64,000 nucleotides of DNA from Macrostomum lignano. Taxonomy: Eukaryota. The stretch covers positions 1 to 64,000 of the forward strand of contig NIVC01003500.1 of the NCBI GenBank assembly GCA_002269645.1, given 5' to 3'. Positions 30,661-61,002 of the stretch are shown in pieces (the first letter of the stretch is position 1; the number at the start of each line of letters is the position of its first letter). A program made the position numbers and the translations under genes. The notes beneath the pieces are model-generated. The model was not told where the DNA came from, did not search any database, and worked only from the letters and a program-made list of their open reading frames with translations.

Positions 30661-30744
30661 CTTAATCACATACCGACAGACAACTAGTTTTACTATAGTG
30701 GATTAATAAGCTTATTATCTGCTATCTTTTCAGCTGTCATTTTA

Positions 30745-34505: not shown

Positions 34506-34611
34506 GATTGTTAATTAATCAGGGTGAGGCAGACCTAGGTGGTCTAAAACAGTCTTGACTAATTTTCAGTTTAAATTCTGTCCTTGATGCCAACTTTCTA
34601 AAAATTTTGGC

Positions 34612-35295
34612 ATGGCAACAACAATGAGGTTTCTCCATCTTGCTGCCTGTTGCCTGCTCGTTGCTAGGGCCGCAGATCTGGTAACCAAAGAAGACGAGCA
34701 CGGAGTTCGGCAGCCCACACTGTGTGAGGTTTGCAAGTACTCAGTGATTGAGCTGGAGAAGCGCCTGGCTGAGACTGAGTCGCACTCGGTGGTCATGACC
34801 AAGGCCGCAGTGCCCTACAAGGACAGCGAGCTGCGCCTCATTGAAGTTCTGGAGAATCCGCCGCTGTGCGACCGCCTGCTGGCCTACCAACTGCACAAGG
34901 AGCACAAAAACAGCCTGCGGTTCAAGCCGGGAAAGTCTGTCACCTTCAAGACACTGGATAGCCTGGTTGCCAAGTGAGTTTGAGTAACTGGCTCCTTTGA
35001 TCCCATTATGCAGCAAATACTTTGAATCTTGAATTATCACACCTGCAGAGGCGTAAAGGTGGACCTCGGCATTCCCAAGGAGCTGTGGGACTCCGCCCCA
35101 ACCGAGGTGCACTCGTTAAAGAAGGAATGCGAAGCTCTCATTGAGACCTGGGAGGACGACATCCGGGACTGGTTCTTCACTGGCCGGTCCGCTGGGGTTC
35201 GCCTGGCCGACTTCCTGTGCCGCCAGCGGGTGCTGAGAGGAAGGGAGGAGGCCTGTCTGGGCGAGAAGTACCCCGACGAGAAGGACGAACTCTGA
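34612..35295 (+). CDS. CNPY3/4: Canopy family saposin-like ER co-chaperone with C-terminal KDEL
   Basis: Exons 34612 (or ATG 34624)-34973 and 35049-35295. Motifs PTLCEVCKY, SELRLIEVLE, LCDRLLAYQLHKE, GVKVDLGIPKELWD, LKKECEALIE, DWF; ends DEKDEL*. Confidence 0.92.
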
Positions 35296-37470: not shown

Positions 37471-37589
37471 ACATAAGGCTTGTGCTGGTGGATACCGTAT
37501 TACGCCTTCTTCATCAAAGCTCCAATCCCGCATTCCTGTTGAGTTTCGAGCTCTTCAGAGCAGCAGCAGCCACAACAGCAGCTCGCAGG

Positions 37590-40500
37590 ATGGCTCAGGC
37601 AGCGGCCCAGTCCTCTAGAAGCAGCAGCAGTCAGGCCAGCAACCGCCTGCACCTGTCCCGGTCGCCTTACCTGGCCCAGCACGCCAACGACCCGGTCCAC
37701 TGGCAGCCCTGGGGGGACGAAGCGTTCGCGCTGGCCAAGGCCAGGGACCAGCTGGTGTTCCTGAGCATTGGCTACTCCACCTGCCACTGGTGCCACGTCA
37801 TGCACAGGGAGTCCTTTCAGAATGCCGACATTGCCAAGCTGCTTAATGACAATTTTGTCAGCATCAAGGTGAGCTGCTGGGTTGGAGTATGCTGATCTAC
37901 ATATATCTAAATTCCCCATCCCTTGCATACCCCTAGCTTCTAAATTCCCCATCCTTTGCATACCCCTAGCTTCTAAATTCCCCATCCCTTGCATACCCCT
38001 AGCTTCTAAATTCCCCATCCTTTGCATACCCCTAGCTTCTAAATTCCCCATCCCTTGCATACCCCTAGCTTCTAAATTCCCCATCCCTTGCATACCCCTA
38101 GCTTCTAAATTCTCCATCCCTTGCATACCCCTAGCTTCTAAATTCCCCATCCCTTGCATACCCCTAGCTTCTAAATTCTCCATCCCTTGCATACCCCTAG
38201 CTTCTAAATTCCCCATCCCTTGCATACCCCTAGCTTCTAAATTCTCCATCCCTTGCATACCCCTAGCTTCTAAATTCCCCATCCCTTGCATACCCCTAGC
38301 TTCTAAATTCCCCATCCCTTGCATAACCACCAGTCTCTAAATTCCCCATCCTTTGCATACCCCTAGCTTCTAAATTCCCCATCCCTTGCATACCACTAGC
38401 TTCTAAATTCCCCATCCCTTGCATACCCCTAGCTTCTAAACTCCCCATCCCTTGCATACCCCTAGCTTCTAAATTCTCCACCCCTTGCATAACTACCAGC
38501 CTCTAAATTCCCCATCCTTTGCATAACCACCAGCCTCTAAATTCCCCATCCCTTGCATACCCCTAGCTTCTAAATTCCCCATCCTTTGGATAACCACTAG
38601 CCTCTAAATTCCCCATCCCATAAAAGCTTCAGATAAATCCTCCCTGTCCCTTCCCCGAACTCCCTAATCCCTGAATTCCTTATCTAAATTCTCCAGCCTC
38701 TAAATCCCGTCACGTCTGAAATACGCCATCAATAATGCTTATGCCCAACTAAAATCTGCGCCTCCATTCCCGCAGTTGGACCGCGAGGAGCGGCCGGACG
38801 TGGACCGGGTGTACATGAACTTCGTGCTGGCCCTGGGAGTCGGCGGTGGCTGGCCCCTGTCCGTCTGGCTGACCCCGGACAAGCGGCCTATCTTTGGCGG
38901 CACCTACTTTCCGCCTGAGAACAGGTACTTCGGCCGGCCCGGGTTCGCGTCTGTCCTGCAGTCTCTGTCCGACAGCTGGAGGAACAAAAGGGACCAGGTG
39001 CGATGCGTGTGCTCAGTGCTTATCGGGAGTGTTCAGTGTGCTCAGTGCTTATCGGGAGTGTTCAGTGTGCTCAGTGCTTATCGGGAGTGTTCAGTGTGCT
39101 CAGTGCTTATCGGGAGTGTTCAGTGTGCTCAGTGCTTATCGGGAGTATTCAGTGTGCTCAGTGCTTATCGAGAGTGATCGGTAGTGATCAGTGTGCTCAT
39201 ACGCTTATTGGAAGAGATCAGTGTGCTCAGGCGCTTATTGGAAGAGATCAGTGTGCTCAGACGCTTATTGGAAGAGATCAGTGTGCTCAGGCGCTTATTG
39301 GAAGAGATCAGTGTGCTCAGACGCTTATTGGAAGAGATCAGTGTGCTCAGACGCTTATTGGAAGAGATCAGTGTGCTCAGACCCTTATTGAAAGAGATCA
39401 GTGTGCTCAGACCCTTATTGAAAGAGATCAGTGTGCTCAGACGCTTATTGGAAGAGATCAGTGTGCTCAGGCGCTTATTGGAAGAGATCAGTGTGCTCTG
39501 GCGCTTATTGGCAGAGATCAGTGTGCTCTGGCGCTTATTGGAAGAGATCAGTGTGCTCAGACGCTTTCAAAGTGTTCAAACCGCTGTCTCCTCTAACCCA
39601 CCCTAGGTGGAGACGCAGGGCACGGAGATTCTGGCCGCCCTCCGCAAACACGCGGTGCCGCCAGCGCCGCCGTCCGCGGCCGCCTTCGACCCGAGCCGGC
39701 CGGCCGCCCTCTGCCTCCGCCAGCTGCGCGACCGGTTCGACTCGGAGCTGGGCGGCTTCGGCCGGGCCCCCAAATTCCCGCAGCCGTCGCTGCTGGCCTT
39801 CCTGCTGCGCCTGGCCGGCCTGCGGTCCGCCGCCGACCCGGCCGAGTCCGCCGAGGCCCTGGCGATGTGCCGCCTCACGCTAGACTGCATGGCCCGCGGC
39901 GGCATCCACGACCACGTCAACGGCGGCTTCCACCGCTACTCCACGGACGCCAAGTGGCACGTGCCGCACTTTGAGAAGATGCTGTACGACCAGGCCCAGC
40001 TGTGCTCCACCTTCGCTGTCACCTCGCGTCTCTGCGCCAAGGAGGACGCCGGGACGGCCAAGGAGCTCGCAGACACGGCCGTGGGCATTGTGGAGTACGT
40101 CTGTCGGGAGCTGTCACACCCGGCCGGCGGCTTCTACAGCGCCCAGGACGCTGACTCGCTGCCGGAGGGCTCGGCTGAGGATGCCGCTGGCGGCCACGGG
40201 CACGGCAAGAAGGAGGGCGCCTTCTGCGTGTGGACCTGGGGACAGCTGGCCGCCGCGCTGGAGGGCGGCTCAATTGGCGACGTGCCCTATTTGAAGGTGA
40301 GCGGGAAGATCCAGATCCTCAGTTGCTAAGCCAGCCTCCCAGATTCTCAGTTGCTAAGCCAGCCTCCCAGATCCTCAGTTGCTAAGCCAGCCTCCCAGAT
40401 CCTCAGTTGCTGGGCCAGCCTTTCAGACCCTCAGTTGCTGGACCAGTCTTTCAGATCCACAGTTGCTAGTAGGCCAGCCTCCCAGATCCTCAGTTGCTGA

Positions 40501-42413
40501 GCCAGCCTTCCAGATCATCAGTTGCTGGGCCAGCCTCCCAGATCCTCAGTTGCTGGGCCAGCCTCCCAGATCCTCAGTTGCTGGGCCAGCCTCCCAGATC
40601 CTCAGTTGCTGGGCCAGCCTCCCAGATCCCAGCTTCTGCCCGTCACTCCGGCCCGCAGGCATTTGCCGCGGTGTACTCTTGCGCCGAGGCGGGCAACGTG
40701 GACCCATACCAGGACCCGCACGACGAGCTGCGCGGCCAGAACGTGCTGATCCGGCGCAAGGCCTGGCGGGAGCTGGCCCAGCAGCTCGGCCTGTCAGAGC
40801 AGCAGCTGCGGGCAGGCATCACCGACTGCCTGCTCCGGCTGCGCGAGGTTCGAGCGAAGCGACCGCCGCCGCATCTGGACGACAAGGTGGGGGGTTTAGA
40901 GCTGTTGGTCAACAGGGGAGCCTCTTCACATCATATTGTCGACAGCAGCGTATAGTGTTAGCAACGCTTAGGTGTTCATTAGCAACGTATAGGTGTGCCT
41001 TAGCAACGTATAGGTGTCCCTTAGCAACGTATAGGTGTCCTTTAGCTACGTATAGCGTCCCTTAGCAACGTATACGTGTCCTTTAGCAACGTATAGATAT
41101 CCCTAGCAACGTATAGGTGTCCCTAGCAACGTACAGGCGTCCCTTAGCAACGTACAGGCGTCCCTTAACAACGTGCATGCGTCCCTTAGCAACGAGTCGA
41201 TATCCCCTAGCAACAACATAGCAACGGACTAGCTCGTTTTACCGAAGATAATCCCACCTGCTCCAGCTGCTCACCTGCTGGAACTCCATGATGATCTCGG
41301 CGCTGGCCCAGGCCGGCCGTCTGTTGAACCGTCCCGACTGGCTCGAGCGCGCCCGTCGCGGAGCAGAGTTCATTCGGTGCCATCTGTGGCGCGAGGACAC
41401 GCGCACCCTGTACCGGGTGGCCTATCCGGACGGCCAGGACGGCGTCACCCTGGGCCCGGCGCCCGTGAAGGCATTCCTTGACGATCACGCCCAGCTCATC
41501 GGCGCCCTGCTGCAGCTGTACCGGGCGACCCTGCACCAGCCTTACCTGGCTTGGGCGCGCCAGCTGCAGGCTGAACAGGATGCGGCTTTCTGGTGCTCGG
41601 AGGCCAAGGCCTACTTTGACACCAGGTGACACCTTAGAGATGTCAGCTTCACGTTCCAAATAAGACTCAAACAGCCTCCCCAAGAACCAAGACTCAGCAG
41701 CCTCCCCAAGAACCAAGACTCATCAGCCTCCCCAAGAACCAAGACTCAGCAGCCTCCCCAAGAACCAAGACTCAGCAGCCTCCCCAAGAACCAAGACTCA
41801 GCAGCCTCCCCAAGAACCAAGACTCAGCAGCCTCCCCAAGAACGAAGACTCAGCAGCCTCCCCAAGAACCAAGAGTCAAGACTCGAACCGCCCCCGCAGG
41901 CGCCAGTCAGCTGATGCGGGCGACGCCGCCAACGCCGCTGCCCCCGAGCTGCCGCTGCGCCTCCTCGACGATCACGACGGCGCCGAGCCGTGCGGCAACT
42001 CCGTGTCGGCCGTCAACCTGGCCAGTCTGCGCGCCTTCGACGACAACAGCGGCAGCTACAGCAGCCGCAGCGGCGAGCTGTTGAACAGGTTCAGCCAGAC
42101 CCTGGGCCGGCAGCCCATGGCCCTGACCGAGATGGCCTCCGCCTGCCTGCTGACCGCGGCCGGGCCACCGGCCACCCTGGTGCTGGCCGCCCCGGCCGAG
42201 GACCAGCTGGAGCCGCTGATGCAGGCCGCCTGGTCCTCGGACAGTCCCGTGCGCCGGCCGGACCTGACGCTGATGAGGCCGCAGGATGCTGGATGGTGCA
42301 GCGGCTACGGCCCGATTGATGGCCGGGCAGCCGCCTACCTGTGCCGGGATTTCACCTGCCAGCTGCCCGTGACCGAGCCTGCCGAGCTGGCTGACCTGCT
42401 GGCCGGCATCTGA
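37590..42413 (+). CDS. SPATA20: Spermatogenesis-associated protein 20 (thioredoxin-like DUF255 + alpha/alpha-toroid; YyaL/Ssp411 family)
   Basis: Exons 37590-37868, 38776-38997, 39607-40296, 40659-40886, 41267-41625, 41900-42413. Motifs [129 protein letters not shown]. Confidence 0.95.
37905..38620. repeat. Intronic minisatellite, 33 bp, SPATA20 intron 1
   Basis: CCCCATCCCTTGCATACCCCTAGCTTCTAAATT units. Confidence 0.95.
39005..39565. repeat. Two related intronic minisatellites (29 bp then 30 bp), SPATA20 intron 2
   Basis: Both share CAGTGTGCTCAG. Confidence 0.9.
40310..41880. repeat. Three distinct intronic minisatellites in SPATA20 introns 3-5 (~28, ~22, 26 bp)
   Basis: Arrays at ~40310-40630, ~40960-41210 and ~41665-41880, separated by exons. 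Confidence 0.85.
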
Positions 42414-42559
42414 TGGCTCCGGAGGATTCTGTGTCATCGGCTTCTGGGATTCATTGATTAGTTCTAGCACTCACTGATGCTGCGCCTTCATCTGCGTGGC
42501 CAGCTCGTGCACCCATTCGTGTGAATTGACCCCTCACGCTAGAGAATTCTAGTTGTTGC

Positions 42560-43060
42560 CCAGGTGAGAATTGCCCTAGCAACCCAGGTGAGAATTGCCG
42601 TAACAGCCCAGGTGAGAGTTGCTCTAACAGCCCAGGTGAGAATCGCCCTAGCAACCCAGGTGAGAATTGCCGTAACAGCCCAGGTGAGAATCGCCCTAAC
42701 AGCCCAGGTGAGAATCGCCCTAACAGCCCAGGTGAGAATCGCCCTAACAGCCCAGGTAAGAATCGCCCTAACAGCCCAGGTGAGAATCGCCCTAACAGCC
42801 CAGGTGAGAATCGCCCTAACAGCCCAGGTGAGAGTTGCTCTAACAGCCCAGGTGAGAATCGCCCTAGCAACCCAGGTGAGAATTGCCGTAACAGCCCAGG
42901 TAAGAATCGCCCTAACAGCCCAGGTGAGAATCGCCCTAACAGCCCAGGTGAGAATCGCGCTAACAACCCAGGTGAGAATCGCCCTAACAACCCAGGTGAG
43001 AATCGCCCTAACAACCCAGGTGAGAATCGCCCTAACAACCCAGGTGAGAATCGCCCTAAC
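42560..43060. repeat. Minisatellite, 27 bp
   Basis: CCCAGGTGAGAATCGCCCTAACAG-type units. Confidence 0.95.
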
Positions 43061-43829
43061 AACTAAGCAAAAATTTGCCCTCTCGCAAAAAATCACATTT
43101 TCAAGCATCGCCCCATTAAGTAGTTTAGGGCGTCCATGATCTTTTTTAATGGTTTTGATTTCATTTTTATAATCCAATTGAAATTTTTTTCATTTTTTAT
43201 TTAACCCCTTCCCACGTCATTATAATCATATTTATTCATTTTTTGTTGTTTTCTCTCTTTTTTTAGTTTAATGCATCGTGTTTCCATCTTTCTGTGACTG
43301 TATATAGAAACTAAGACCGATAAAAATTCATAATTACATTGAGCTCTGCCACTCGGATCATCTTCTCAAGTTAAATTACTTTCGCGTTCATTTTCTCAAC
43401 TTCTTTAAAATATGTTTTGCGTTTCGGTGACTTATGTACAATTTATTTAACAGCTACTTTAAGTAGGCAGGCACTGTAGTCAGTACTTAACTGCAATAGT
43501 AGTGGCTCTGGTTTATCAGTGATTAGAACAAGTTAGTGAACCCTAAATGAATTTCTATCAGCACTAGTGAATTATTCTTAAGGAGTGATTAGTGAAGTGA
43601 GTGATTACGTAACTTTTCTGTAAAAAAATATTGCATAGTTTAGACACAATTGGCCACAAAGCAAAACAGCTGTTGAAAAAGTTAGTGAACCCATTTGAAA
43701 TTCCAGCAACTAATGCTCTGTACTCGTAATTCCATCCATAGCAGCAATAACAGCCTGCAATACATTTTTGTGACTGTTAATCAATTTACAGCACTGCTCT
43801 CCAGGAATCTTTCCCATTCTACAGTGCAA

Positions 43830-44830
43830 AACCTCTCCAACTCATTCAGAATCTCTCCAACTCATCCAGAACCTCTCCAACTCATTCAGAATCTCTCCAA
43901 CTCACCCAGAACCTCTCCAACTCATTCAGAACCTCTCCAACTCACCCAGAATCTCTCCAACTCATTCAGAATCTCTCCAACTCACCCAGAATCTCTCCAG
44001 CTCATTCAGAATCTCTCCAACTCACCCAGAACCTCTCCAACTCATTCAGAACCTCTCCAACTCACCCAGAACCTCTCCAACTCATCCAGAACCTCTCCAA
44101 CTCACCCAGAACCTCTCCAACTCATTCAGAACCTCTCCAACTCATCCATGACCTCTCCAACTCACCCAGAACCTCTCCAACTCATCCATGACCTCTCCAA
44201 CTCATTCAGAACCTCTCCAACTCACCCAGAACCTCTCCAACTCACCCAGAACCTCTCCAACTCATTCAGAACCTCTCCAACTCATTCAGAACCTCTCCAA
44301 CTCACCCAGAACCTCTCCAACTCATTCAGAATCTCTCCAACTCATCCATGACCTCTCCAACTCATTCAGAATCTCTCCAACTCACCCAGAATCTCTCCAA
44401 CTCATTCAGAATCTCTCCAACTCATCCAGAACCTCTCCAACTCATTCAGAACCTCTCCAACTCATTCATGACCTCTCCAACTCATTCAGAACCTCTCCAA
44501 CTCATTCAGAACCTCTCCAACTCATTCAGAACCTCTCCAACTCACCCAGAACCTCTCCAACTCATTCAGAATCTCTCCAACTCACCCAGAACCTCTCCAA
44601 CTCATTCAGAACCTCTCCAACTCATTCAGAATCTCTCCAACTCATTCAGAACCTCTCCAACTCATTCAGAACCTCTCCAACTCATTCAGAACCTCTCCAA
44701 CTCACCCAGAACCTCTCCAACTCATTCAGAACCTCTCCAACTCATTCAGAACCTCTCCAACTCATTCAGAACCTCTCCAACTCATTCAGAACCTCTCCAA
44801 CTCACCCAGAACCTCTCCAACTCATTCAGT
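43830..44830. repeat. Minisatellite, 20 bp x ~50
   Basis: GAACCTCTCCAACTCATTCA units. Confidence 0.95.
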
Positions 44831-44859: not shown

Positions 44860-45380
44860 TGAAGTTGGACATTATTTCCAGTTCCACTTGCAGCACTTAC
44901 AGCCCTACAGCATGATTCTGCTACCTCTATACTTTGCAGTAGGCAATGCATTATTTTGTTTTAATGCCAGCCGTCTCTGCGAAATGTACCCACCCAAACA
45001 ACTCTAAATTTTTGTCTCTTGTGAGCAACTCGTCTGTGAAGTCCTTGACGGTTCAAAGACTCCTGCACCGTTGACTTGTGCACCTCTATTCCGCATTGAT
45101 CAGCTGATGCTGCAATTGACTTGCAGTCACGGTTGGATCACTGTCGACAGGCTGAGCTCTCCTTGCTGTGCGCTCAGAAACTTTGGCAGGTCGTCCGTCC
45201 ACTTCCGAGGCAGTGGAGTCACAGTGTTGCGCTTCTGCCATTTGTGAATGACAGCTCTAGCAGTGGAAGCACTGAGCCGAAGTTGGTTGGCAATTCTTCT
45301 TGTATCCGAGGCCAGTGTTGTGAGATGATACAACAAGTGCAGCAAGCCTCTGAGGCTTACAGCTTTGGGCAAATGCATTT
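44860..45380 (-). mobile_element. Degenerate Tc1-family transposase fragment
   Basis: HTH RRIANQLRLSASTARAVIHKWQKRNTVTPLPR; second HTH QLQHQLINAGIEVHKSTVQESLNRQGLHRR; PTAKYRGSRIML*GC resembling PTVKHGGGSIMVWGC; stops and deletions. Confidence 0.75.
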
Positions 45381-45651: not shown

Positions 45652-47078
45652 GTGAGCTGCAGTCAGGGTGTCTCTGGTTTATCAGTGAGCTGCAGTCAGG
45701 GTGTCTCTGGTTTATCAGTGAGCTGCAGTCAGGGTGTCTCTGGTTTATCAGTGAGCTGCAGTCAGGGTGTCTCTGGTTTATCAGTGAGCTGCAGTCAGGG
45801 TGTCTCTGGTTTATCAGTGAGCTGCAGTCAGGGTGTCTCTGGTTTATCAGTGAGCTGCAGTCTGAGTGTCTCTGGTTTATCAGTGAGCTGCAGTCAGGGT
45901 GTCTCTGGTTTATCAGTGAGCTGCAGTCAGGGTGTCTCTGGTTTATCAGTGAGCTGCAGTCTGAGTGTCTCTGGTTTATCAGTGAGCTGCAGTCAGGGTG
46001 TCTCTGGTTTATCAGTGAGCTGCAGTCAGGGTGTCTCTGGTTTATCAGTGAGCTGCAGTCAGGGTGTCTCTGGTTTATCAGTGAGCTGCAGTCTGAGTGT
46101 CTCTGGTTTATCAGTGAGCTGCAGTCAGGGTGTCTCTGGTTTATCAGTGAGCTGCAGTCTGAGTGTCTCTGGTTTATCAGTGAGCTGCAGTCTGAGTGTC
46201 TCTGGTTTATCAGTGAGCTGCAGTCAGGGTGTCTCTGGTTTATCAGTGAGCTGCAGTCTGAGTGTCTCTGGTTTATCAGTGAGCTGCAGTCAGGGTGTCT
46301 CTGGTTTATCAGTGAGCTGCAGTCTGAGTGTCTCTGGTTTATCAGTGAGCTGCAGTCAGGGTGTCTCTGGTTTATCAGTGAGCTGCAGTCAGGGTGTCTC
46401 TGGTTTATCAGTGAGCTGCAGTCTGAGTGTCTCTGGTTTATCAGTGAGCTGCAGTCAGGGTGTCTCTGGTTTATCAGTGAGCTGCAGTCAGGGTGTCTCT
46501 GGTTTATCGGTGAGCTGCAGTCAGGGTGTCTCTGGTTTATCAGTGAGCTGCAGTCAGGGTGTCTCTGGTTTATCGGTGAGCTGCAGTCAGGGTGTCTCTG
46601 GTTTATCAGTGAGCTGCAGTCTGAGTGTCTCTGGTTTATCAGTGAGCTGCAGTCTTAAGAGTCTCTGGTTTATCAGTGAGCTGCAGTCTTAAGAGTCTCT
46701 GGTTTATCAGTGAGCTGCAGTCTTAAGAGTCTCTGGTTTATCAGTGAGCTGCAGTCAGGGTGTCTCTGGTTTATCAGTGAGCTGCAGTCTTAAGAGTCTC
46801 TGGTTTATCAGTGAGCTGCAGTCTTAAGAGTCTCTGGTTTATCAGTGAGCTGCAGTCTTAAGAGTCTCTGGTTTATCAGTGAGCTGCAGTCTTAAGAGTC
46901 TCTGGTTTATCAGTGAGCTGCAGTCTTAAGAGTCTCTGGTTTATCAGTGAGCTGCAGTCTTAAGAGTCTCTGGTTTATCAGTGAGCTGCAGTCTTAAGAG
47001 TCTCTGGTTTATCAGTGAGCTGCAGTCAGGGTGTCTCTGGTTTATCAGTGAGCTGCAGTCTTAAGAGTCTCTGGTTTA
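45652..47078. repeat. Minisatellite, 33 bp x ~43, three sequence variants, abutting GATC
   Basis: GTGAGCTGCAGTC(AGGGT/TGAGT/TTAAG..)..TCTCTGGTTTATCA units. Confidence 0.95.
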
Positions 47079-47130
47079 TCTCCTTCTGCTGCGTGCACTG
47101 CCACGTGCACTGTTGTTGCTAGGGCCGCAG

Positions 47131-47655
47131 CGGCCCTGGCAACGGCTTCCCCGGCATCTCTGCAGCAGCTCGAGCAGCTCATGCGGCGCCGCTGACTCCC
47201 CGCCCGCCGGCCGCCGCTGCCGCCACCGTCTGGTGCCCGACGCTCCTACGTGGCGCAACGTTGCGGACTCCGAGCTTCCCCCGCCCACCGCCATCGACTC
47301 GGACACGATCGCCCTGCTCGAGCGGCTGTCCCTCGTCCAGTTTGACACCGCGGACACTGTCCGAGTGGTGGCTGAGGCTGTCCGGTTCGCTGACGAGCTT
47401 CGCCTGGTGCACGCTGGTCCTGAGGTCGAACCGATGACCTCTCTGCCGGAGGCCTGGGGCTGGCGGTGCCCGTTGCGCGCGGACACCCCGGCGGAGCAGC
47501 CCAGAACGGCCGTGCTGAGCAACGCGGCCCAGACCGAGGAGCACTACTTTGTGGCTCCGCCAGGCAACATCGCCGCCAAGGACTCCGGCAGGGAGCGCCT
47601 GGACCGGCTGGCCGAGGGCGCCAAGTCGAAGGCGTCCCGGTCGTCAAGAAGCTGA
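47131..47655 (+). CDS. GATC: Glu-tRNA(Gln) amidotransferase subunit C, mitochondrial (no genomic ATG found)
   Basis: VPDAPTW...IDSDTIALLERLSLVQF...AEAVRFADEL...VEPMTS...LRAD...VLSNAAQTEEHYFVAPPGNI. Arg/Ser-rich presequence-like N-terminus. In-frame TAA at 47062; the first in-frame Met is internal. Acceptor GGCCGCAG ends at 47130 in phase 0. Confidence 0.85.
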   Translation, partial: RPWQRLPRHLCSSSSSSCGAADSPPAGRRCRHRLVPDAPTWRNVADSELPPPTAIDSDTIALLERLSLVQFDTADTVRVVAEAVRFADELRLVHAGPEVEPMTSLPEAWGWRCPLRADTPAEQPRTAVLSNAAQTEEHYFVAPPGNIAAKDSGRERLDRLAEGAKSKASRSSRS

Positions 47656-48313: not shown

Positions 48314-49204
48314 TAGACAGACAGACAGACAGACAGAAAGACACTAACACAGACAGACTGACAGACAGACAGAAAGACGGAAAGACAGACAGACAGACAG
48401 ACAGCCTTGCTTCTATTCGTCACGATTCTGATTCCCACAGCCGCCAGTCCCCATCAGTGCCCACCGGCCCCTAGCCGGGATTCGAGTCCTGGACCTCACC
48501 CGGGTGCTTGCCGGGCCCTACTGCTCAATGATCCTGGGCGATATGGGCGCAGATGTTATCAAGGTGGAGCGGCCGGGCGGCGGGGACGAGACCCGGCAGT
48601 GGGGGCCGCCGTTCGCGGCCGAGGACTCCGTGTACTTCCTGAGTGTCAACCGCAACAAGCGCAGCGTCTGCCTGGACTTCGGCCAACCGGCCGGGGCCGA
48701 CCTGGTCCGCCGGCTGTCCCGGCGCTGCGACGTCCTGCTGGAGAACTTCGTGCCCGGCAAGCTGGCGAAGCGCGGGCTGGACTTTGCCTCGCTGAGCGCC
48801 CAGAATCCCGGCCTCATCTACTGCAGCATCTCCGGCTTCGGCCAGTCCGGGCCGTGGCGCCGGCGGGCCGGCTACGACGTCGCCGCGGCTGCCATCGGCG
48901 GCTTCCTCGGCATCACCGGCGAGCCCGACGGTCCGCCCGTCCGGGCCGGGGTGGCCGTCACGGACCTGTCCACCGGCCTGTATGCCCTGTCCGCCATCCT
49001 GGCCGCCCTGTACCGGCGGCGGACGGCCGAGAGTCTGGGGGAGGTCGGCCGGGGCTGCTGGATCGACGCCAACCTGCTGGACACCCAGGTGGCCACAATG
49101 TCGCATGTGGCTGCCAGCTTCCTGCACACCGGTTAGGGGCTCAGAGTCTGTCTGTCTGTCTGTCCGTCTGTCTGCCTGTCTGTCTGTCTGTCTGTCTGTC
49201 GGCC

Positions 49205-49244
<40 letters not shown>

Positions 49245-49331
49245 AGCCTGTCAGTCAGCCTGTCTTAGTGTCTGTCTGTCTGCCCTGCCCTGTCTGTCTG
49301 TCTGTCTTGTCTGTCTGTCTGTCTGTCTTAG

Positions 49332-49366
<35 letters not shown>

Positions 49367-50044
49367 GTCTGTCTGTCAGCCTGTCTGTCTGTCTGTCTTA
49401 GTGTCTGTCTGTCTGCCTGTCTGCCTGTCTGTCTGTCTGTCTTAGTGTCTGTCTGTCTGCCTGTCTGTCCATCACAGAACCCACTGACCCTCGCAGGCCA
49501 GGAGCCGAGCCGCTGGGGCACAGGGCACGCCAACCTCGCGCCCTACCAGGCCTTCGATACCAGCGACCGCCGCCAACTCATCCTGGGCGCCGGCAACGAC
49601 CGCCAATTCGGCGTCCTCTGCCGCCGGCTCGGCGCTCCCCACCTAGCAACGGATCCTCGCTTCCTTAGCAACCGGCTGCGGGTTGCTAACCGGACGAGCC
49701 TGATCCCGCTGATTCAGGCCCTGGTGCGCGCCCGGCCGCTGGCGGATTGGCTGGCGACGCTGGAGGGCTCCGACCTGCCGTACGGCCCGGTGAACACTGT
49801 GGCGGAGGCCCTGGCCAGCCCGCCGGTGGCAGATCCGGCCAGTGGCCTGCTGGTCACCTGCGAACACCCGGCGGCCGGCCGGGTCACCGCTCCGGGTCCC
49901 GCTGTCCGTTTTGACGGCCGGCGCGGTGAAGTGACGCGGCCGCCGCCCAGGCTGGGTGAGCACACTGACGAGGTGCTCGGCGAGCTGCTGGACTGCGGCT
50001 GCGAGGAGCTGCTGGAGCTGCGGCGGGGGAAAGTGATCGCCTGA
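48160..50044 (+). CDS. SUGCT: Family III CoA-transferase (CaiB/BaiF), succinyl-CoA:glutarate CoA-transferase-like; 5' end uncertain
   Basis: Exons 48441-49131 and 49497-50044, plus a probable small first exon 48160-48213. Motifs [112 protein letters not shown]. Confidence 0.88.
48240..49470. repeat. Two opposed (GACA)n / (TGTC)n microsatellites in SUGCT introns
   Basis: (GACA)n at ~48240-48400 and (TCTG)n at ~49145-49470. Confidence 0.9.
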
Positions 50045-52550: not shown

Positions 52551-53932
52551 CTCTACTATCTTATGTTACCGTGGCGCTGGAGACCCCATTGGGCGGCGTC
52601 AACCCTCCGTCTATAGCGACGCGTCGGCCGTTTAGGGATAAGCGGATCGGGGCGCCCACGCCTTCCTGCCATGCAGCTTGAAGTCAAAGTAAGTCAAGCA
52701 TGGTATACCGTGGCCTTAGCGCCAGTTTCAGCCTGTATTTTGTGTTGACTTTGTCCGTGCGTGGGGGAATTGCGATATTGAACTTATTGCCGCTGACGCT
52801 GAGTTTATAGCAGAGCTCTCCCTTTCAATCCTAAACTCTCAATTATCTTTATTTCTCCCACTCTATATCTTTCTCATCACTGCGCTTGTGTCTATCTATT
52901 GGTCTCTCATGCACACAAAAGTATCTTTAGACCTCGAGTTGGGAACTTCAGAAAAGCTCCGTGAAGTTGAGCAACTATTGAACCCTGCGATAGGCATAAT
53001 CTGGGCCGCAGTCTGCCGGTGCACGCGAGCATACTGCTGCAAATTGTTGCGCTTTCCAGAGTGACAGCGGCTCACTGTATAATAGGCCAAAGGCAAGGCA
53101 AGTGGCTACATGCTTTCCCCGCCTGCAGGCTTCTCCTGGTCAAAGCCTGCGGGCTCGCGAGTCTGCCTTGGAAAAAAGAAAGGAACTGGGAGAAGCTTTG
53201 AATTCTCTCTGCTTTTGTAACTGAAACTTTAGGACTGCAAAAGCTAAATTCAAGAGTCAGGTCGTCTCCTGGCAACACAGGTGAGCTACACCTTTATTCC
53301 CTTTGCCGAGTGGGAACTCCTCCCATGGTGCAAGCAGGTGTTCTTTGTTTTCAACTTCAAAGATAAGGGCCTAGCCCAAGATTCAGGACAGCAGCAGTAA
53401 GTCAGGCAGCCTGCTGCTTAGTGTTACAGTTTCTCATGTGCTAGTGCACAGTTCATGCATCCCAGTCTGTACGACATCTTCGTAATGCATTCGCGAACTT
53501 ATAAGCTTGCGAGTAGTTAGTCTCGCATCAAAACCGTACTTGTAGTGGCTTCAGTGTCACCTTTTTTCAATTCATACATGCAACCAAAACACACCGACAA
53601 ACTGAAGCCACTTCATATAATAAGGATTAAATATGCATTAGAGCATTAATCCGGTTATTAACCAAGCCAAGACATAGGCACAGCCTCTGAGCCCCATCAG
53701 CGCCGCGATTCGCCAGAACCGCGACCGCCAATGCCCAGTCACTTGGTCTCCAGGAGAGGCCTGCGCGCACCAACTACTGATGCTCTCCTGTCACAGATCC
53801 GTGCAGACAAAAAGCATCGGCTGCTATAGAAATTTTGCGCTTCTATCGCAATTTCTCAAAATCGATTTGAGCAGAGGCCAACCGACAACCATCAGCACTT
53901 CGTCCAATTTTCCACTGCGAAGTGAAGACCTG

Positions 53933-54430
53933 ATGCGGCTGTGCAGAGTGGTTTTCAGCAGCGAGTGCCTGCTGTGCGCGCTGCTCGTTGCTGCGCTCGC
54001 CTCGTGCGGCAGCTGCAGAGGTCAGCAAGAGGTCAAGGCCGCCGTAGACGGAGAGGCTTCGCACAGCCAAGAGCATGGTGGGCTCCAAGAGAAGCGGTTC
54101 AACGGCGGAATGTTCGGCAAGCGGTTCAACGGCGGAATGTTCGGCAAGCGGTTCAACGGCGGAATGTTCGGCAAGCGGTTCAACGGCGGAATGTTCGGCA
54201 AGCGGTTCAACGGCGGAATGTTCGGCAAGCGGTTCAACGGCGGAATGTTCGGCAAGCGATTCAACGGCGGAATGTTCGGCAAGCGGTTCAACGGCGGAAT
54301 GTTCGGCAAGCGGTTCAATGGAGGAATGTTCGGCAAGCGGTTCAACGGTGGAATGTTCGGCAAACGCTTTAATGGAGGAATGTTCGGCAAGCGGTTCAAC
54401 GGCGAAATGTTCGGCAAGCGTTCAAGATAA
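53933..54430 (+). CDS. Neuropeptide precursor, 165 aa: signal peptide + 11 x FNGGMFamide + 1 x FNGEMFamide
   Basis: ATG 53933, hydrophobic MRLCRVVFSSECLLCALLVAALASCG, acidic spacer, then 12 units of KR-FNG(G/E)MF-G-KR (dibasic cleavage sites, Gly amide donor). Confidence 0.9.
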   Translation: MRLCRVVFSSECLLCALLVAALASCGSCRGQQEVKAAVDGEASHSQEHGGLQEKRFNGGMFGKRFNGGMFGKRFNGGMFGKRFNGGMFGKRFNGGMFGKRFNGGMFGKRFNGGMFGKRFNGGMFGKRFNGGMFGKRFNGGMFGKRFNGGMFGKRFNGEMFGKRSR

Positions 54431-56671: not shown

Positions 56672-58052
56672 TCAGACCTGGGTGACCCGGCAGCCGCGCT
56701 GCGGTCCCTGCGAGATGCTCCTGGAATTCCTGGAATACTGAGCACGCATGCCGCGACCCACCGCCATCCTGACGCTGTCCGACTCGCCCAGCTGGTCGCC
56801 ATCGCCGGCGTCGAACGCCGGGTTGTCATGGCAACGGTTGCTAGCGTCCTGGGACTCCTGGTGCTCCAACGAGCAGGGATAATCTGAGGACTCGACAATG
56901 GCCATGCGGCCGAGGCTGATGGTGGCCACGGCGAGCTCGTAAGGCGGGGGCGGCGGCTGCTGTTGAAGCCAGGAGCGATGAAGCTGCTCGGCCGAGAGCC
57001 TGGAGCCCAGCTTCCACTGCTCTGGCTGGGCAGCGGCGGCGCTGGCCGTCACGCAGTCCGCGTAGCTTGGCGGCGGCTCCGAGCGATGGCGGCGCCGAAT
57101 TTGGCGCCGTTTCAATCGGCGCCGCCTGGCGCAGACTCCGATGAAGACAACGGCCGTGGCAGTTGCCATGGCAACTAGGAGAGTGGGCAGGATGACGCCG
57201 AGCAGTACAGAGTTGCTGCTGGAGCCGGCGGTGTCGGTCGGGTTGCCAGAGTCTTTCTGGCTGTCCAGCTGCAGGTACAGCACGGTGCCGCCGGTGCCAC
57301 AGTACAGCAGCTGCGGGTTCGGGTGGTGCGGGGGGGGCTTTGTGTCCACTAGGATGGACAAAATGTGTCTTAATTGGAAGCTTTGTATCCACTAGGATGG
57401 ACAAAATGTGTCTTAATTGGAAGCTTTGTGTCCACTAGGATGGACAAAATGAGTCTTAATTCAATTGGAAACTTGGAGACAAAGACAAAGACCCAATAAC
57501 AAAGCGTTCCCTTACAACGCAGATTGGGTCTTATTAACTGTTTTCCACTCTCTCAAATCTCCCAGGGCACTAAAAACAGGGACACACAGCCAAGCCTGTC
57601 ACCACCTGCAGAAAGTCAGTCTCGCCCAGCGACAGGCCTGCTGGATTGCTGGCTGGCGGCGGCTCCAGCAGGGCGCCGCTCTCGTGCCTGCCGGTGGCCA
57701 CCACGAGGGTGTTGCAGTGCGGCTGCTTGGGCAGGCACAGCCACCGGTACAGGTCGATGTAGCAGGCGGAGGCGGGGCTGGGGTGGCCCAGGGTTCGCCG
57801 CCAGGCTAGCACGCGGCGGGCGGCTCCGGGCAGGACGGTGAGGCCGCACTGGCTGACCGGCGGCTCCCAGGTGACGCTGGCCCAGTCGAGGCCCTCTAGA
57901 GACAGGGTCTGGCCGCAGGTGCGCAGCATGTAGTCCCGGCCGAGGCCGGAGGGAGCAGCCGAGGCGGCGGCCACCTGCTGGGACCAGCGGGACGCCAGGT
58001 CAGCTGCGAGCAGCAGCAGCAGCAACTGCAGGGCAGCCGCCGATGCGCGCAT
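56672..58052 (-). CDS. Type I single-pass membrane protein with small Cys/beta ectodomain and two cytosolic PPxY motifs
   Basis: Exon 1 58052-57606 (alternative upstream ATGs to ~58094), exon 2 57310-56672, phase 0 GT-AG. Signal peptide MRASAAALQLLLLLLAADLA; TM VLLGVILPTLLVAMATATAVVFIGVC followed by RRRR; EPPPSY and PPPPPY; DNPAF. Confidence 0.75.
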
Positions 58053-61002
58053 GCCGATTGCCATGGCAGCGGCCGCCGCCACCTCCGGGGACATTGGCAG
58101 GGAGGCCGCGGGCTGCGAGGTTGAGAAGAGCAGCGAAACACCAGATGGAGGTGAAGGCATTTTGCCGACTGCCGTGGCTGCAGTTGAAGGTTGAAATAAG
58201 CTGCAGTGCTCTATTTAAAGTAGTCTACTAGTGCTGCACGAATGCTATGCTATTGCCAAATTGATGGCATTGCTATAGGGTGTCCATTAGCCCCTACACT
58301 TGCTGATCATTGCATGTAGACTCATCTAAATAGAGCATAAGCTCAGATTACTATGATCAGTGCCATGTCTATTCATTCTCTCCTTCAATTTTATATTTAT
58401 ACTTGTTTTAAAACTGTTTTGACCTGTTTTTGGGCTATAAATAGGCCTAAAACTTGTTTTCTTAAATATACTGGTGTGTTAATATCATTTGGATTGAATT
58501 GAGACTGACAATGTCTATGATAAACAAAATGCATTGGCAACAAATAAAATTTTAATAGGGGGGCTATATATACTTCTACTGGTATTTCTTTTTTTTATTT
58601 GTTAGATGTAAGATAAGTTACATTCCCATTTTAACTAAATTATTATGTTTAGTAATAATGTCTATTTGTCTATGTCTAATGTCTATGCCATAATTTACCT
58701 ATGAGTATGAGGCTATGACTTTATGATAAAGATTGAAATGAATAATAAGGCAATATCTTTTTACAATAATAATTAGCTTTTTTATTATATTAATATAGTA
58801 GTAGACTTCATAAATATTTGTTTACTTCCATAGTCCAGATCATGGCAGGCATATACCAGAATGAAAACTCATGTGTTTTTAATTTTACACTAACACTAAT
58901 GTTTGAAAAACATTAATTAAACACTAAACATTAAAAACATTAAACATTAAAACTTGCAAGCATTGATCTTGTTGGCTGCTGCATAGAATATCAGGCAATG
59001 TCTATCTAAAACATGTATTGGAAAACTTTGACCTCTGCCTCTCTTATGTTTCTTAGATCTTTCGAAACTTCTATCTTCTCTTCTGTTTCCTTTTTTTCTC
59101 TTATCTTTTGTCTCTCCTATCATCTCTCTTCTCTTCTTTCTCCCCTTTTTTCTTCTCTTCCCAACCTCTCTTCTCTCTTGTCTTTGCTCTCTCATCTCTT
59201 TCAATGTAAAATTAAAAAAAATTACACTAAGCCCAGAGTTGCTTGTATACCATTTTTTTAAAGAACTGTAAGAGACACTATTTTGCCTATCATTTTTACG
59301 TACACTAAATATGACTATTTTTCTAAATTGCTAAAAACATCTCTGTGCCTGCATAAATAAATATTTTATACCATTAATAGTAAATTTTAGTATTGATTAG
59401 CAGCCTACAATATAATCTAGCGTTTTTATTAGTTTAAATGCGTACGCCATATTGATTATGTTTTATATATAAGCGAGAGAATAAATTGCCTTCGCCAGCC
59501 TGGCTATAATTAAGGCTTTTCTTTGTGGTTGTACCCAAACATTGTTCTAAAAATAGACTTGTCTTAGTCATTTAAAGGCACTCCGCCTTCCCTCTCTTGT
59601 GAGGCTTGTATAGCTAGAAGTGTTCAACACTTCCTTTCCCCCCATTCCCCACTCCCTGGGATGTTCAGTCCTACCCCGAGTGATTGCCTCCCCCCTTTCC
59701 CAGCAGAACTGGTGCCCACCTCTTTTGCCCCTCCCCCCTTTTAGTGGACAGTCTGTCTGCTCAGGTGTACAGCCTTATTCCCTCAGATGTATAGTCTGCC
59801 CTAACATCCCCGCTCTTGACCCTTCCTAGTAGAAATCTCCCATATTCATTAGGTGGATTGCCTTCTTACCATATTCTATATTAGATGGTCAGTCTACTTG
59901 AGCCAGCATTCCCTATTAGTGTTTAGAAATTCCCCATTAGTGCACTTTCCTAGGCAACTCTGATCTACTGCAAAGCCTTTAATTCCCTTCTCCCATCTAT
60001 ATTTCCCAGATTGAGAAGGAAATTGTGTCTTGCCACTTGAACACACCCATGCTCCAGGAATACTCCTTTCAATAGGCTATTCCAAACAATTCCTCCCAAA
60101 TCCCCCAGTCCCGATTTAATTTTCCAACCCTTAGTATAGTTTTGGTGATTCCCAGTGAATAGTAAAAAACCCCTGTAACAGTTTTGGTGATTCCCAGTGA
60201 ACAGTAAAAGACCACTGTAACAGTTTTAGTTGCAGGGAAGACAAGTAGAAGGTGTTCTATGACAGAACATATACCATGGCAGTATTTTGCTAAAAACAGA
60301 TATTCTTTGTTTCAATTTTGTTTTTCTTATAAATTTTGTTAATATTTTTTATTATAGTTTCTAATTAGTTTTTAAAGAGCTTTTTTGGTTGAAATTTAAT
60401 AACACAATTACATTAGCCCTGACATTGCCATTTTTATATATGCTAACTATGTATACTTCATATTGAACCTGAAAATTCTATACGCCAAGTGTATACCAAG
60501 ATTGTCAGCAAGAGCAAAAATATGCCAGAATTTTTTTGTATAAAGCCCACCTTCTATATTATGGGTTAACTTCTTATAATAGGGCCTATTTCTTAGAAAA
60601 ACTTCATTTAGATTTATATAAAACATTTTTCTATTTTGGTTAGGCCTAGCTATAATAAATTGTAAAAATATTTAACAAATAATATTTGTTATTATCACAT
60701 TTTAATAGTATAGATAGAAGGCTAAAAGGGCCAAGAAAATCAACTTGCCAACTCACTACTTGCTCAAGTAATCAAGAACAACAAAACAGCCTTTATACTC
60801 TAGAAACATGAAAAGCAAATGAGGCATGCAAAAATAAATAGAAAACAAGAATAGAATATCGGCTGGTTTTAATTTAACCAGCCAATAGGCCTACCCAAGA
60901 CTGAGAGAAAGATTCCCTTAAAGGATAAAGGAGAAGGATAGAAAATGCCATCATTAGTTGGCATTACTTAGGCTAGAAATTAGGCCTAGGCTAGATATGC
61001 TG

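What the first reader, a model, noticed from the sequence alone, without database searches (positions are those of the whole stretch)
47062..47655. GATC has no start codon: candidate for initiation from the spliced-leader AUG
Seen: in-frame TAA at 47062, a 1.4-kb minisatellite upstream and no in-frame ATG before the conserved domain. An acceptor GGCCGCAG (ending 47130), of the same type as the cis-acceptors at 33078, 40658 and 41899, is followed in phase 0 by CGG CCC TGG. Established: flatworm spliced leaders end in AUG, which can serve as the initiator Met (shown in schistosomes). Inference: SL-AUG + exon gives MRPWQRLPRHLCSSSSSS..., a plausible mitochondrial presequence, making an essential gene dependent on trans-splicing for its start codon.
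Basis: partly seen in the sequence, partly recalled or inferred. Interest (0 to 1): 0.8.

Follow-up and report, generated by a model that had tools for sequence, protein, structure and literature searches.

The report
GatC gene without its own ATG
In the flatworm Macrostomum lignano, the mitochondrial GatC gene and the CoA-transferase gene next to it have no start codon of their own and most likely use the AUG that ends the trans-spliced leader, a mechanism already shown in schistosomes; the exact splice junction for GatC is not established.

Summary
The window is Macrostomum lignano contig NIVC01003500.1. The GatC reading frame opens after TAA 47062 and runs to TGA 47653-55. Its only in-frame ATG (47434) is a conserved residue inside the GatC domain. 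A 43-unit minisatellite lies directly upstream, and GGCCGCAG ends at 47130 in phase 0. The M. lignano spliced leader (SL) ends in ATG. In two paralogous loci GatC is gene 2 of a three-gene transcriptional unit (SPATA20-like, GatC, CoA-transferase). The downstream CoA-transferase is a cleaner case of the same thing: three independent gene models start exactly at acceptor cccacag| (48440), in phase 0, with a stop four codons upstream and no ATG before the domain.

An SL-donated start is therefore the best explanation for GatC (about 0.57 overall). The proposed junction at 47130 is weak. An AG lies 8 nt upstream of it, whereas all 7 verified local acceptors have at least 17 AG-free nt. The better-looking acceptors 47122 and 47165 are out of frame. 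Annotated transcripts start at 47098/47104, not at any AG. No RNA reads could be consulted.

The mechanism has been known since 2006, so this is a new member of a known kind. Interest is modest.

The parts
37539..42413 (+). SPATA20-like (Thioredox_DsbH) gene, six exons. It is the first gene of the transcriptional unit and has its own ATG at 37591.
   Evidence: The reconstruction equals the deposited PAA51118.1 exactly. The paralogues are named Mlig016554g1 and Mlig001315g1. Pfam hit. ATG seen.
45652..47080 (+). Minisatellite of 43 units of 33/34 bp. Each unit carries GTGAGCTGCAG, that is a consensus donor GTGAG plus a YTNCAG acceptor. It contains no ATG.
47062..47064 (+). In-frame TAA that closes the GatC frame upstream. 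It lies in the last variant repeat unit.
47068..47120 (+). 53-nt AG-free, pyrimidine-leaning tract (GC 0.57); likely the 3' end of the outron or intron. The annotated transcript 5' ends fall inside it, at 47098 in the window and at the 47104 equivalent in L001 and L002.
47121..47122 (+). Competing acceptor (gttgctag|). Direct SL joining here puts the AUG in phase 1 and opens a 105-aa overlapping ORF that ends at TGA 47435-37.
47123..47130 (+). The proposed acceptor GGCCGCAG, phase 0. Its CCNCAG|C form matches the verified trans-acceptor at 48440, but only 6 AG-free nt precede it.
47131..47229 (+). 33 codons of the putative mitochondrial presequence. Together with the SL Met they read MRPWQRLPRHLCSSSSSSCGAADSPPAGRRCRHR.
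   Evidence: This rests on composition only; no predictor was available.
47160..47165 (+). CTGCAG acceptor, the best YTNCAG match in the region. It is in phase 2, so the SL-AUG would give MQLEQLMRRR*.
47230..47655 (+). Conserved GatC region (LVPDAPTW...IDSDTIALLERLSLVQF...EEHYFVAPPGNI) through the stop codon TGA.
47434..47436 (+). The only in-frame ATG. It is the conserved internal Met of the 'VEPM' motif, not a start. It overlaps TGA 47435-37 of the phase-1 ORF (ATGA).
48429..48440 (+). In-frame TGA (48429-31) and the trans-splice acceptor ttcccacag| of the CoA-transferase gene.
48441..50044 (+). CoA-transferase family III gene (SUGCT-like), with exons 48441-49131 and 49497-50044. It has no ATG before the domain, and its annotated CDS starts exactly at the acceptor in phase 0.
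   Evidence: P0005, P0006 and P0007 all start PPVPISAHRP. Coordinates. Intron and first ATG (48528). NCBIfam NF052585 aligns from residue 7 to profile position 4.

Best explanation
GatC of M. lignano is a single-exon gene that lies inside a polycistronic transcriptional unit (SPATA20-like, then GatC, then CoA-transferase). Its pre-mRNA is resolved by spliced-leader trans-splicing. The leader's 3'-terminal AUG, joined in phase 0 most likely at 47130|47131, serves as the initiator. The product is a 175-aa precursor: Met, a 33-residue Arg-rich presequence, then the conserved GatC body.

Shown: there is no usable genomic ATG; the SL ends in ATG; GatC belongs to the transcriptional unit; the neighbouring gene has the same arrangement with an acceptor-exact transcript start.

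Inferred: that GatC mRNA carries the SL, which AG is used, that ribosomes start at the SL AUG, and that the N-terminus targets mitochondria.

My estimates are about 0.45 for this exact junction and about 0.57 for an SL-donated AUG by any route.
For: - No ATG exists between TAA 47062 and the conserved block; the only in-frame ATG is a conserved internal residue.
- All 8 aligned GatC homologues carry a Met plus roughly 23-60 residues ahead of the KVPxxPTW block. A start at ATG 47434, or at CTG 47230 / GTG 47233, would therefore lack a presequence.
- The M. lignano SL is CGGTCTCTTACTGCGAAGACTCAATTTATTGCATG. 30-39% of its genes are trans-spliced and about 15% lie in operons.
- Gene names Mlig016554g1/g2/g3 in L002, and Mlig001315g1/g3 in L001, show one RNA-seq transcriptional unit covering the three genes. 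The distance from GatC to the CoA-transferase is 785 nt, or 614 nt without the microsatellite, which is under the published 1-kb operon threshold.
- The adjacent CoA-transferase has three gene models from two assemblies starting at PPVP, exactly after cccacag|, in phase 0, with TGA four codons upstream and its first ATG inside the domain. This shows that the organism uses this mode of initiation.
- Acceptor 47130 has the same CCNCAG|C form as 48440, and CGCAG| is the commonest verified local acceptor.
- Base composition steps from GC 0.57 to 0.71 at about 47130.
- The N-terminus has 7 Arg, 2 His and 1 Asp in 34 residues.
- Only one GatC cluster for M. lignano was found in the protein collection.
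Against: - An AG (47121-22) lies 8 nt upstream of 47130. All 7 verified acceptors in the window have at least 17 AG-free nt, and 47122 has 53. By the first-AG rule (established knowledge), 47122 should win, and direct joining there is out of frame.
- 47165 is the only candidate that matches the published YTNCAG motif, and it is also out of frame.
- The deposited CDSs start at 47098 or the 47104 equivalent, not after an AG. They differ between copies in the way coverage-type or TSS-type 5' ends do. The annotation pipeline therefore did not place a trans-splice cut at 47131.
- No M+exon protein is on record in the collection.
- The codon-usage signal in 47131-47289 does not separate the three frames.
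- The three loci are near-identical recent copies and give no comparative power.
Confidence: 0.45

Rival explanations
1. The SL-AUG is still the start codon, but by a two-step route. The SL is trans-spliced to a CTGCAG| acceptor inside the minisatellite (for example 47025). A 22-nt mini-exon (47026-47047, TCAGGGTGTCTCTGGTTTATCA) follows. Its GTGAG donor (47048) is then cis-spliced to the typical-looking acceptor TAG 47122, removing a 75-nt intron that contains the TAA. The product would be MSGCLWFIRPQRPWQRL...
For: - Every unit carries a consensus donor and a YTNCAG acceptor, 43 of each.
- 32 of the 42 inter-motif segments are 22 nt long, and ATG + 22 nt + the exon from 47123 reads in frame through GatC.
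- 47122 has a 53-nt AG-free tract like real acceptors, and a yUnAy match (TTTAT, A at 47078) lies 44 nt upstream (read directly from the sequence).
Against: - All three deposited models are single blocks with no such junction.
- The in-frame outcome has a 1-in-3 chance expectation.
- In L001 and L002 the last units are the 23-nt TAA-containing type, so more distant donors would be needed.
- Dozens of competing donors and acceptors in the array would make splicing chaotic.
Confidence: 0.12
2. Initiation is not at an AUG. The mRNA is either not trans-spliced (5' end near 47098-47104, as annotated) or is trans-spliced out of frame. GatC would then start at an in-frame near-cognate codon: CTG 47098 or 47110, or TTG 47113 or 47116.
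For: - The annotated 5' ends are at 47098/47104 in three loci.
- In-frame CTG and TTG codons are present there.
- The in-frame translation of 47086-47130 (LLRALPRALLLLGPQ) looks presequence-like.
Against: - These codons lie 0-18 nt from the annotated 5' end, too close for efficient recognition (established knowledge of scanning).
- GC3 of 47068-47130 is 0.52 against about 0.8 in the coding sequence.
- An internal gene of a polycistronic unit needs the SL for a cap.
- The neighbouring gene clearly uses the acceptor-exact mode.
Confidence: 0.18
3. An unannotated upstream exon, cis-spliced to 47130 (or to 47122 or 47165), supplies a genomic ATG.
For: Three ATG...GT[AG]AG combinations in 44946-45320 are phase-compatible with a phase-0 acceptor.
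Against: - They lie in an AT-rich stretch that gives a weak Sleeping Beauty-type HTH hit on the opposite strand.
- They have no coding character.
- Their number is what chance gives in 4.7 kb.
- No RNA-seq-based model in any of the three loci has an upstream exon.
- The 24-mer and 33-mer arrays contain no ATG.
Confidence: 0.08
4. The locus does not make GatC as read. Either these are recently inactivated copies, or the assembly carries an extra base in 47184-47192 that hides an in-frame ATG at 47181.
For: - The three copies are too similar to show purifying selection.
- Removing one base after ATG 47181 would give MRRADSPPAGRR..., also presequence-like (my own reading of the sequence).
Against: - Three separately assembled copies agree base for base in a stretch without homopolymers.
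- All 19 columns that are invariant in the nine-sequence alignment carry the shared residue in the M. lignano protein.
- No other M. lignano GatC appeared in the searches.
- The same ATG-less arrangement in the neighbouring gene argues for a regular mechanism rather than damage.
Confidence: 0.07

Closest known systems
[quoted passage not shown]
   Same: A flatworm SL ending in AUG is joined in frame to an ORF that has no AUG of its own, so the protein's first residue is supplied in trans.
   Different: This is a different, free-living and early-branching flatworm. Here the use of the SL-AUG is inferred from genome sequence and annotation only, and the GatC junction is ambiguous. The schistosome cases rest on cDNAs and translation assays.
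slORFs: ORFs created by SL addition in nematodes, Oikopleura and trypanosomes (slORFfinder, PMC9851317)
   Same: The start codon is contributed by the leader, and standard annotation misses it.
   Different: Those cases mostly use near-cognate NUG codons within the SL and are supported by ribosome profiling. Here it is a true AUG at the SL 3' end, and no profiling data exist.
M. lignano operons and transcriptional units resolved by SL trans-splicing (Wudarski et al. 2017, PMC5730564; Ustyantsev & Berezikov 2021, PMC8629364)
   Same: The genes are same-strand neighbours named g1/g2/g3 of one transcriptional unit. The spacers are full of repeats, and the downstream gene starts at an acceptor.
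   Different: I found no discussion in those papers of genes that depend on the SL for their start codon. The SPATA20-like to GatC spacer is long: 4.7 kb raw, and 1.8 kb after removing the tandem repeats.
Mitochondrial GatC (GATC) of animals, a subunit of the GatCAB Glu-tRNA(Gln) amidotransferase
   Same: The PF02686 domain, the KVPxxPTW / LLERLSLV / EEYFVAPPGNI motifs and an N-terminal extension of similar length are all present.
   Different: All 8 aligned homologues begin with a genomic Met; this one does not.

Membership tests
Flatworm genes initiated at the SL 3'-terminal AUG | The organism's spliced leader ends in AUG. | tested here: met
   The M. lignano SL ends ...TTGCATG (PMC8629364; PMC5173321; PMC10468722). 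The organism was identified through 99%-identical BOX15_Mlig proteins and the contig name.
Flatworm genes initiated at the SL 3'-terminal AUG | There is no genomic in-frame AUG upstream of the conserved protein body, and the frame is closed upstream by a stop. | tested here: met
   TAA is at 47062 and the first in-frame ATG (47434) is a conserved internal residue.
Flatworm genes initiated at the SL 3'-terminal AUG | The mature mRNA carries the SL. | not testable with these tools
   No RNA reads were available. The indirect evidence is that GatC is gene 2 of a three-gene transcriptional unit. Against this, the deposited models do not start at an AG.
Flatworm genes initiated at the SL 3'-terminal AUG | The trans-splice acceptor puts the SL AUG in phase with the ORF with no intervening stop. 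| tested here: inconclusive
   47130 is in phase 0 but has an AG 8 nt upstream. 47122 and 47165 look more typical and are out of phase. A mini-exon route through 47122 is in phase.
Flatworm genes initiated at the SL 3'-terminal AUG | Ribosomes initiate at the SL AUG. | not testable with these tools
   This needs ribosome profiling, N-terminal proteomics or reporter assays.
Mitochondrial GatC (PF02686 / TIGR00135) | The sequence matches the family model above its threshold. | tested here: met
   Pfam PF02686 scores 26.7 bits against a cutoff of 23. The bacterial equivalog TIGR00135 scores only 20.3 against 47.1. Annotated mitochondrial GatC proteins hit at E = 1e-13 to 1e-7. There was no PDB sequence hit.
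Mitochondrial GatC (PF02686 / TIGR00135) | An N-terminal mitochondrial presequence is present. | tested here: inconclusive
   The test was composition only: 7 Arg, 2 His and 1 Asp in 34 residues, with a length in the range of the homologues. No TargetP or MitoFates was available.
M. lignano operon (Ustyantsev & Berezikov criteria) | Adjacent same-strand genes, the downstream one SL trans-spliced, with a repeat-adjusted spacer under 1 kb. | tested here: inconclusive
   GatC to CoA-transferase is 785 nt raw and 614 nt adjusted, and the downstream start is at an acceptor, so this pair meets the criteria. SPATA20-like to GatC is 4717 nt raw and 1774 nt after removing the tandem repeats. It would be near 1 kb only if the stretch with the weak transposase-like hit is also subtracted.

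The most novel reading that the evidence does not exclude
GatC output may be set by splice-site choice in a cluster of competing acceptors fed by a minisatellite of 43 'SL-acceptor + 22-nt mini-exon + donor' modules. Direct SL joining at TAG 47122 opens a 105-codon overlapping ORF whose TGA overlaps the only in-frame ATG (ATGA at 47434-37). Joining at CAG 47130, or through a mini-exon into 47122, opens GatC instead. Because two consecutive operon genes lack genomic ATGs, SL-donated starts might also be systematic for internal operon genes of M. lignano. In that case some 'partial' CDSs in the deposited annotation would in fact be complete.
Probability: 0.12. Interest if true: 0.6.

Novelty: new member of a known kind. 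Interest (0 to 1): 0.3.

Why it matters
If confirmed, this is a documented case, in a basal free-living flatworm, of an essential mitochondrial-translation factor whose initiator Met and targeting peptide depend on trans-splicing. The CoA-transferase next door would be a second case. That would extend the schistosome result of 2006 across the phylum.

It would also have a practical consequence. Proteins labelled 'partial' in the Mlig_3_7 GenBank annotation that start at trans-splice acceptors are complete once the SL Met is added. Transgene design in this model organism would need to take the SL AUG into account.

It does not open a new mechanism.

Tried and rejected
- I looked up hypothetical SL-Met products by exact sequence: M+RPWQ... 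in both allelic forms, M+SLVYLL..., the TTG-start form, the 73-aa internal-Met form, and M+PPVP... None is in the collection. This gave no RNA-level evidence in either direction.
- I searched the supplements of Wudarski 2017, Grudniewska 2016 and 2018, and Ustyantsev 2021 for the gene ids or the names GATC, SUGCT and SPATA20. Nothing was held. Wasik 2015 is not held.
- I compared the three paralogous loci for conservation of the acceptor. They are near-identical throughout, so the comparison is uninformative.
- I tested codon usage and GC3 to find where coding begins. Only the rise in GC content near 47130 is usable; the frames are not separated. One small training segment was accidentally out of frame.
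- Two brute-force gene-model searches failed before the ORF-guided one succeeded.
- The last protein search, with a SPATA20-like exon at E <= 1e-60, returned nothing and was wasted.
- A PDB sequence search gave no hit.
- There is no SL RNA gene in the window.
- I rejected acceptor 47067 (gag|). It has no AG-free tract, low pyrimidine content, and a stronger CTGCAG| lies 10 nt upstream.
- I rejected ATG 47434 and CTG 47230 as starts, because they would remove conserved sequence or the presequence.
Full report
**Identity of the window.** The reading frame in the finding encodes a protein 99% identical to 'hypothetical protein BOX15_Mlig016554g2, partial [Macrostomum lignano]'. The window's own copy lies on GenBank contig NIVC01003500.1 of assembly GCA_002269645.1 (Mlig_3_7), and window coordinates equal record coordinates.

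**The observation.** Every sequence statement is correct.
- TAA at 47062-64 is in frame with an ORF that runs to TGA 47653-55.
- The region has only two ATGs. ATG 47181 is in frame +2 and gives MRRR-stop. ATG 47434 is in frame but is codon 102 of 174.
- In an alignment with mitochondrial GatC from insects, nematodes and a ray, that Met falls in the conserved 'VEPM/L' column in the middle of the domain.
- Tandem Repeats Finder reports a 33-bp unit repeated 43 times at 45652-47080. My own count finds 43 copies of GTGAGCTGCAG spaced 33 or 34 nt apart. The in-frame TAA sits in the last variant unit.
- GGCCGCAG occupies 47123-47130 and is followed by CGG CCC TGG in phase 0.
- The protein is GatC: Pfam PF02686 is above its gathering score. 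TIGR00135 aligns residues 60-143. There are 34 homologues with E between 2e-13 and 9e-7, and every one that carries a name for its function is annotated as mitochondrial Glu-tRNA(Gln) amidotransferase subunit C.
A six-exon model using them reproduces the deposited 780-aa SPATA20-like protein PAA51118.1 residue for residue.

**What is established about the organism.**
- The M. lignano spliced leader is CGGTCTCTTACTGCGAAGACTCAATTTATTGCATG (PMC8629364; a longer form is given in PMC5173321).
- Between 30 and 39% of genes are trans-spliced and about 15% lie in operons. Many RNA-seq 'transcriptional units' are polycistronic precursors, which the authors cut into genes g1, g2 and so on using SL and poly(A) signals (PMC5730564; PMC8629364).
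- The most enriched motif at trans-acceptors is [T/C]TNCAG, found at 44% of sites.
- For flatworms in general, the SL's terminal AUG can act as the initiator. In S. mansoni it is in frame in 28% of trans-spliced transcripts, and more than 40 cDNAs need it (Cheng et al. 2006, as summarised in PMC9851317; also PMC12582326, and PMC5832876).
- Wiberg et al. 2023 label the terminal ATG of Macrostomum SLs as a 'translation start codon' (PMC10468722).
- I found no paper that analyses SL-AUG-dependent genes in Macrostomum.

**Context of the gene.** Two paralogous loci were fetched (L001 and L002). They are almost identical to the window around GatC, including the 50 nt upstream, but have a shorter minisatellite.
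- In L002 the three consecutive same-strand genes are named Mlig016554g1 (SPATA20-like), g2 (GatC) and g3 (CoA-transferase). In L001 the flanking genes are Mlig001315g1 and g3. In two of the three loci, therefore, the RNA-seq assembly joined all three genes into one unit.
- In the window, which has the longest minisatellite, the unit is split. The published description says units tend to break in repeat-rich operon spacers, and this fits.
- SPATA20-like has its own ATG at 37591.
- The GatC to CoA-transferase spacer is 785 nt, or 614 nt without the (CAGA)n run, which is under the 1-kb operon criterion. The SPATA20-like to GatC spacer is 4717 nt, of which 2943 nt are three minisatellites.

**The neighbouring gene settles whether this organism uses the mechanism.** The CoA-transferase family III gene (best NCBIfam match: succinate-glutarate CoA-transferase, with residue 7 aligned to profile position 4) has these features:
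- an in-frame TGA at 48429;
- the acceptor ttcccacag| ending at 48440;
- an exon that begins CCG CCA GTC CCC in phase 0;
- its first in-frame ATG at 48528, inside the conserved domain.

The window's deposited CDS starts at 48441. Two UniProt models derived from the older ML2 assembly also begin PPVPISAHRP. Three models from two assemblies thus start exactly at the acceptor. That is what SL-trimmed transcripts give, and only the SL AUG can open this frame. It is better evidence than GatC itself.

**GatC itself: what supports an SL start.**
- Homologues show that the conserved body begins at KVPxxPTW, which is RLVPDAPTW here, from CTG 47230. All 8 aligned homologues have a Met plus roughly 23-60 residues before that point.
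- An N-terminal extension must therefore be encoded between 47065 and 47229, where there is no ATG.
- SL-AUG joined at 47131 gives 34 residues with 7 Arg, 2 His and one Asp. The length and composition are plausible for a presequence, but I could not run a targeting predictor.
- The acceptor has the same CCNCAG|C form as the verified trans-acceptor at 48440, and CGCAG| is the commonest verified cis-acceptor in the window.
- GC content steps from 0.57 to 0.71 at this point.

**GatC itself: what weakens the specific model.**
- I measured the AG-free distance upstream of seven verified acceptors (six cis, one trans). All have at least 17 nt. Candidate 47130 has 6 nt, because TAG ends at 47122. Candidate 47122 has 53 nt and candidate 47165 has 33 nt, and 47165 also has the only YTNCAG match.
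- Direct SL joining at 47122 puts the AUG in phase 1 and opens a 105-residue overlapping ORF. Joining at 47165 gives MQLEQLMRRR-stop.
- The deposited GatC CDSs are 5'-partial and begin at 47098 (window) and at the 47104 equivalent (L001, L002). No AG precedes these positions, and they differ between copies, as do the coverage-type 5' ends of SPATA20-like and of the neuropeptide gene. The authors' pipeline did not place a trans-splice boundary at 47131. RNA containing 47098-47130 exists, either as precursor or as mature mRNA.
- In this annotation 'partial' is not diagnostic by itself. The SPATA20-like and neuropeptide CDSs are also 'partial' only because the ORF was extended to the transcript end.
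- No RNA-level data could be reached. Exact look-ups of the predicted Met-initiated products found nothing.

**A variant route that the sequence allows.** Each minisatellite unit carries GTGAGCTGCAG, a consensus donor followed by a YTNCAG acceptor (43 of each).
- In 32 of 42 cases, 22 nt separate one unit's acceptor from the next unit's donor.
- ATG, plus such a 22-nt mini-exon, plus the exon from 47123, reads in frame through GatC as MSGCLWFIRPQRPWQ....
- In the window, the last such mini-exon (47026-47047) would be followed by a well-formed 75-nt intron: GTGAG, then a TTTAT branch-like site, then a pyrimidine-leaning tract, then TAG 47122. This intron would remove the TAA.
- This route still needs the SL AUG. 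It has a 1-in-3 chance expectation of being in frame, and no deposited model supports it.

**Other alternatives.**
- Near-cognate initiation at CTG or TTG 47098-47116 would fit the annotated 5' ends. However, it places the start 0-18 nt from the cap, in sequence with GC3 of 0.52.
- A scan of the 4.7-kb spacer for an ATG followed by a GT[AG]AG donor in a compatible phase found three combinations. All lie in an AT-rich stretch that gives a weak Sleeping Beauty-type HTH match on the other strand. This is about what chance gives, and no model supports them.
- An assembly error that hides ATG 47181 would need the same extra base in three separately assembled copies, in a stretch without homopolymers.

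**Verdict.** An SL-donated initiator is the best explanation: about 0.57 overall, 0.45 for the 47130 junction and 0.12 for the mini-exon route. The neighbouring gene supports it more strongly than anything in the flagged interval does. The mechanism is a textbook feature of flatworm trans-splicing, so this is a new member of a known kind. Its main value lies in annotation and as a testable example in a transgenic model flatworm.

Noticed in passing
window 48429-50044: The CoA-transferase III (SUGCT-like) gene immediately downstream also has no genomic start codon. TGA lies four codons upstream, the acceptor cccacag| ends at 48440, and the exon is in phase 0. Three gene models from two assemblies begin exactly there. 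With only about 13 residues before the domain there is no obvious presequence, although human SUGCT is mitochondrial (that last point is from my own knowledge).
   Followed up: yes
window 42550-43063, 43830-44829, 45652-47080: All three minisatellites in the operon spacer are built from splice-signal-like units. The 24-mer reads GTGAGAATCGCCCTAACAGCCCAG (donor, CTAAC branch-like site, CAG; 21 GT[AG]AG). The 20-mer ends in a pyrimidine-rich ...CATTCAG. The 33-mer has GTGAG plus CTGCAG in each of its 43 units. Whether they derive from introns or affect processing of the precursor is unknown.
   Followed up: partly
window 47434-47437: The stop codon of the 105-codon phase-1 ORF, which the SL-AUG would open if joined at 47122, overlaps the only in-frame ATG of GatC (ATGA). 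This is probably coincidence.
   Followed up: no
window 49132-49496; L002 12057-12136: The single CoA-transferase intron is almost entirely (GTCT)n. It is 365 nt long in the window and 80 nt in L002. The splice sites differ between copies: donor GTTAGG against GTGAGG, and acceptor ctcgcag| against ctcgaag|. In L001 the gene is annotated only as a 193-aa C-terminal fragment starting at an internal ATG.
   Followed up: partly
window 53822-54430 (Met at 53933); L001 16277-16885; L002 16228-17034: This is a neuropeptide-precursor-like gene. It has a signal-peptide-like MRLCRVVFSSECLLCALLVAALASC followed by 12 tandem copies of RFNGGMFGKR in the window. The L002 copy is longer (268 residues by its coordinates, against 202). 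The deposited CDS is labelled 5'-partial only because the ORF was extended upstream of the real Met.
   Followed up: partly
window 37539-37593: The SPATA20-like CDS is deposited as 5'-partial from 37539, although a proper ATG at 37591 precedes the conserved N-terminus. 'Partial' flags in this annotation therefore mix artefacts with true SL-dependent starts.
   Followed up: partly
window 45130-45378 (- strand): A short ORF gives a weak match to the Sleeping Beauty/Tc1-type transposase HTH domain (E = 0.006, below the family cutoff). It may be a degraded transposon between two of the minisatellites.
   Followed up: partly
window 21649-24219 (+), 4992-7360 (+), 29129-35292 (+), 56675-58214 (-): Other GC3-rich exon blocks are present. 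One begins MGVHGLWSIIQPT..., which looks like an XPG/GEN1-type nuclease N-terminus with its own ATG. These genes were not examined further.
   Followed up: no
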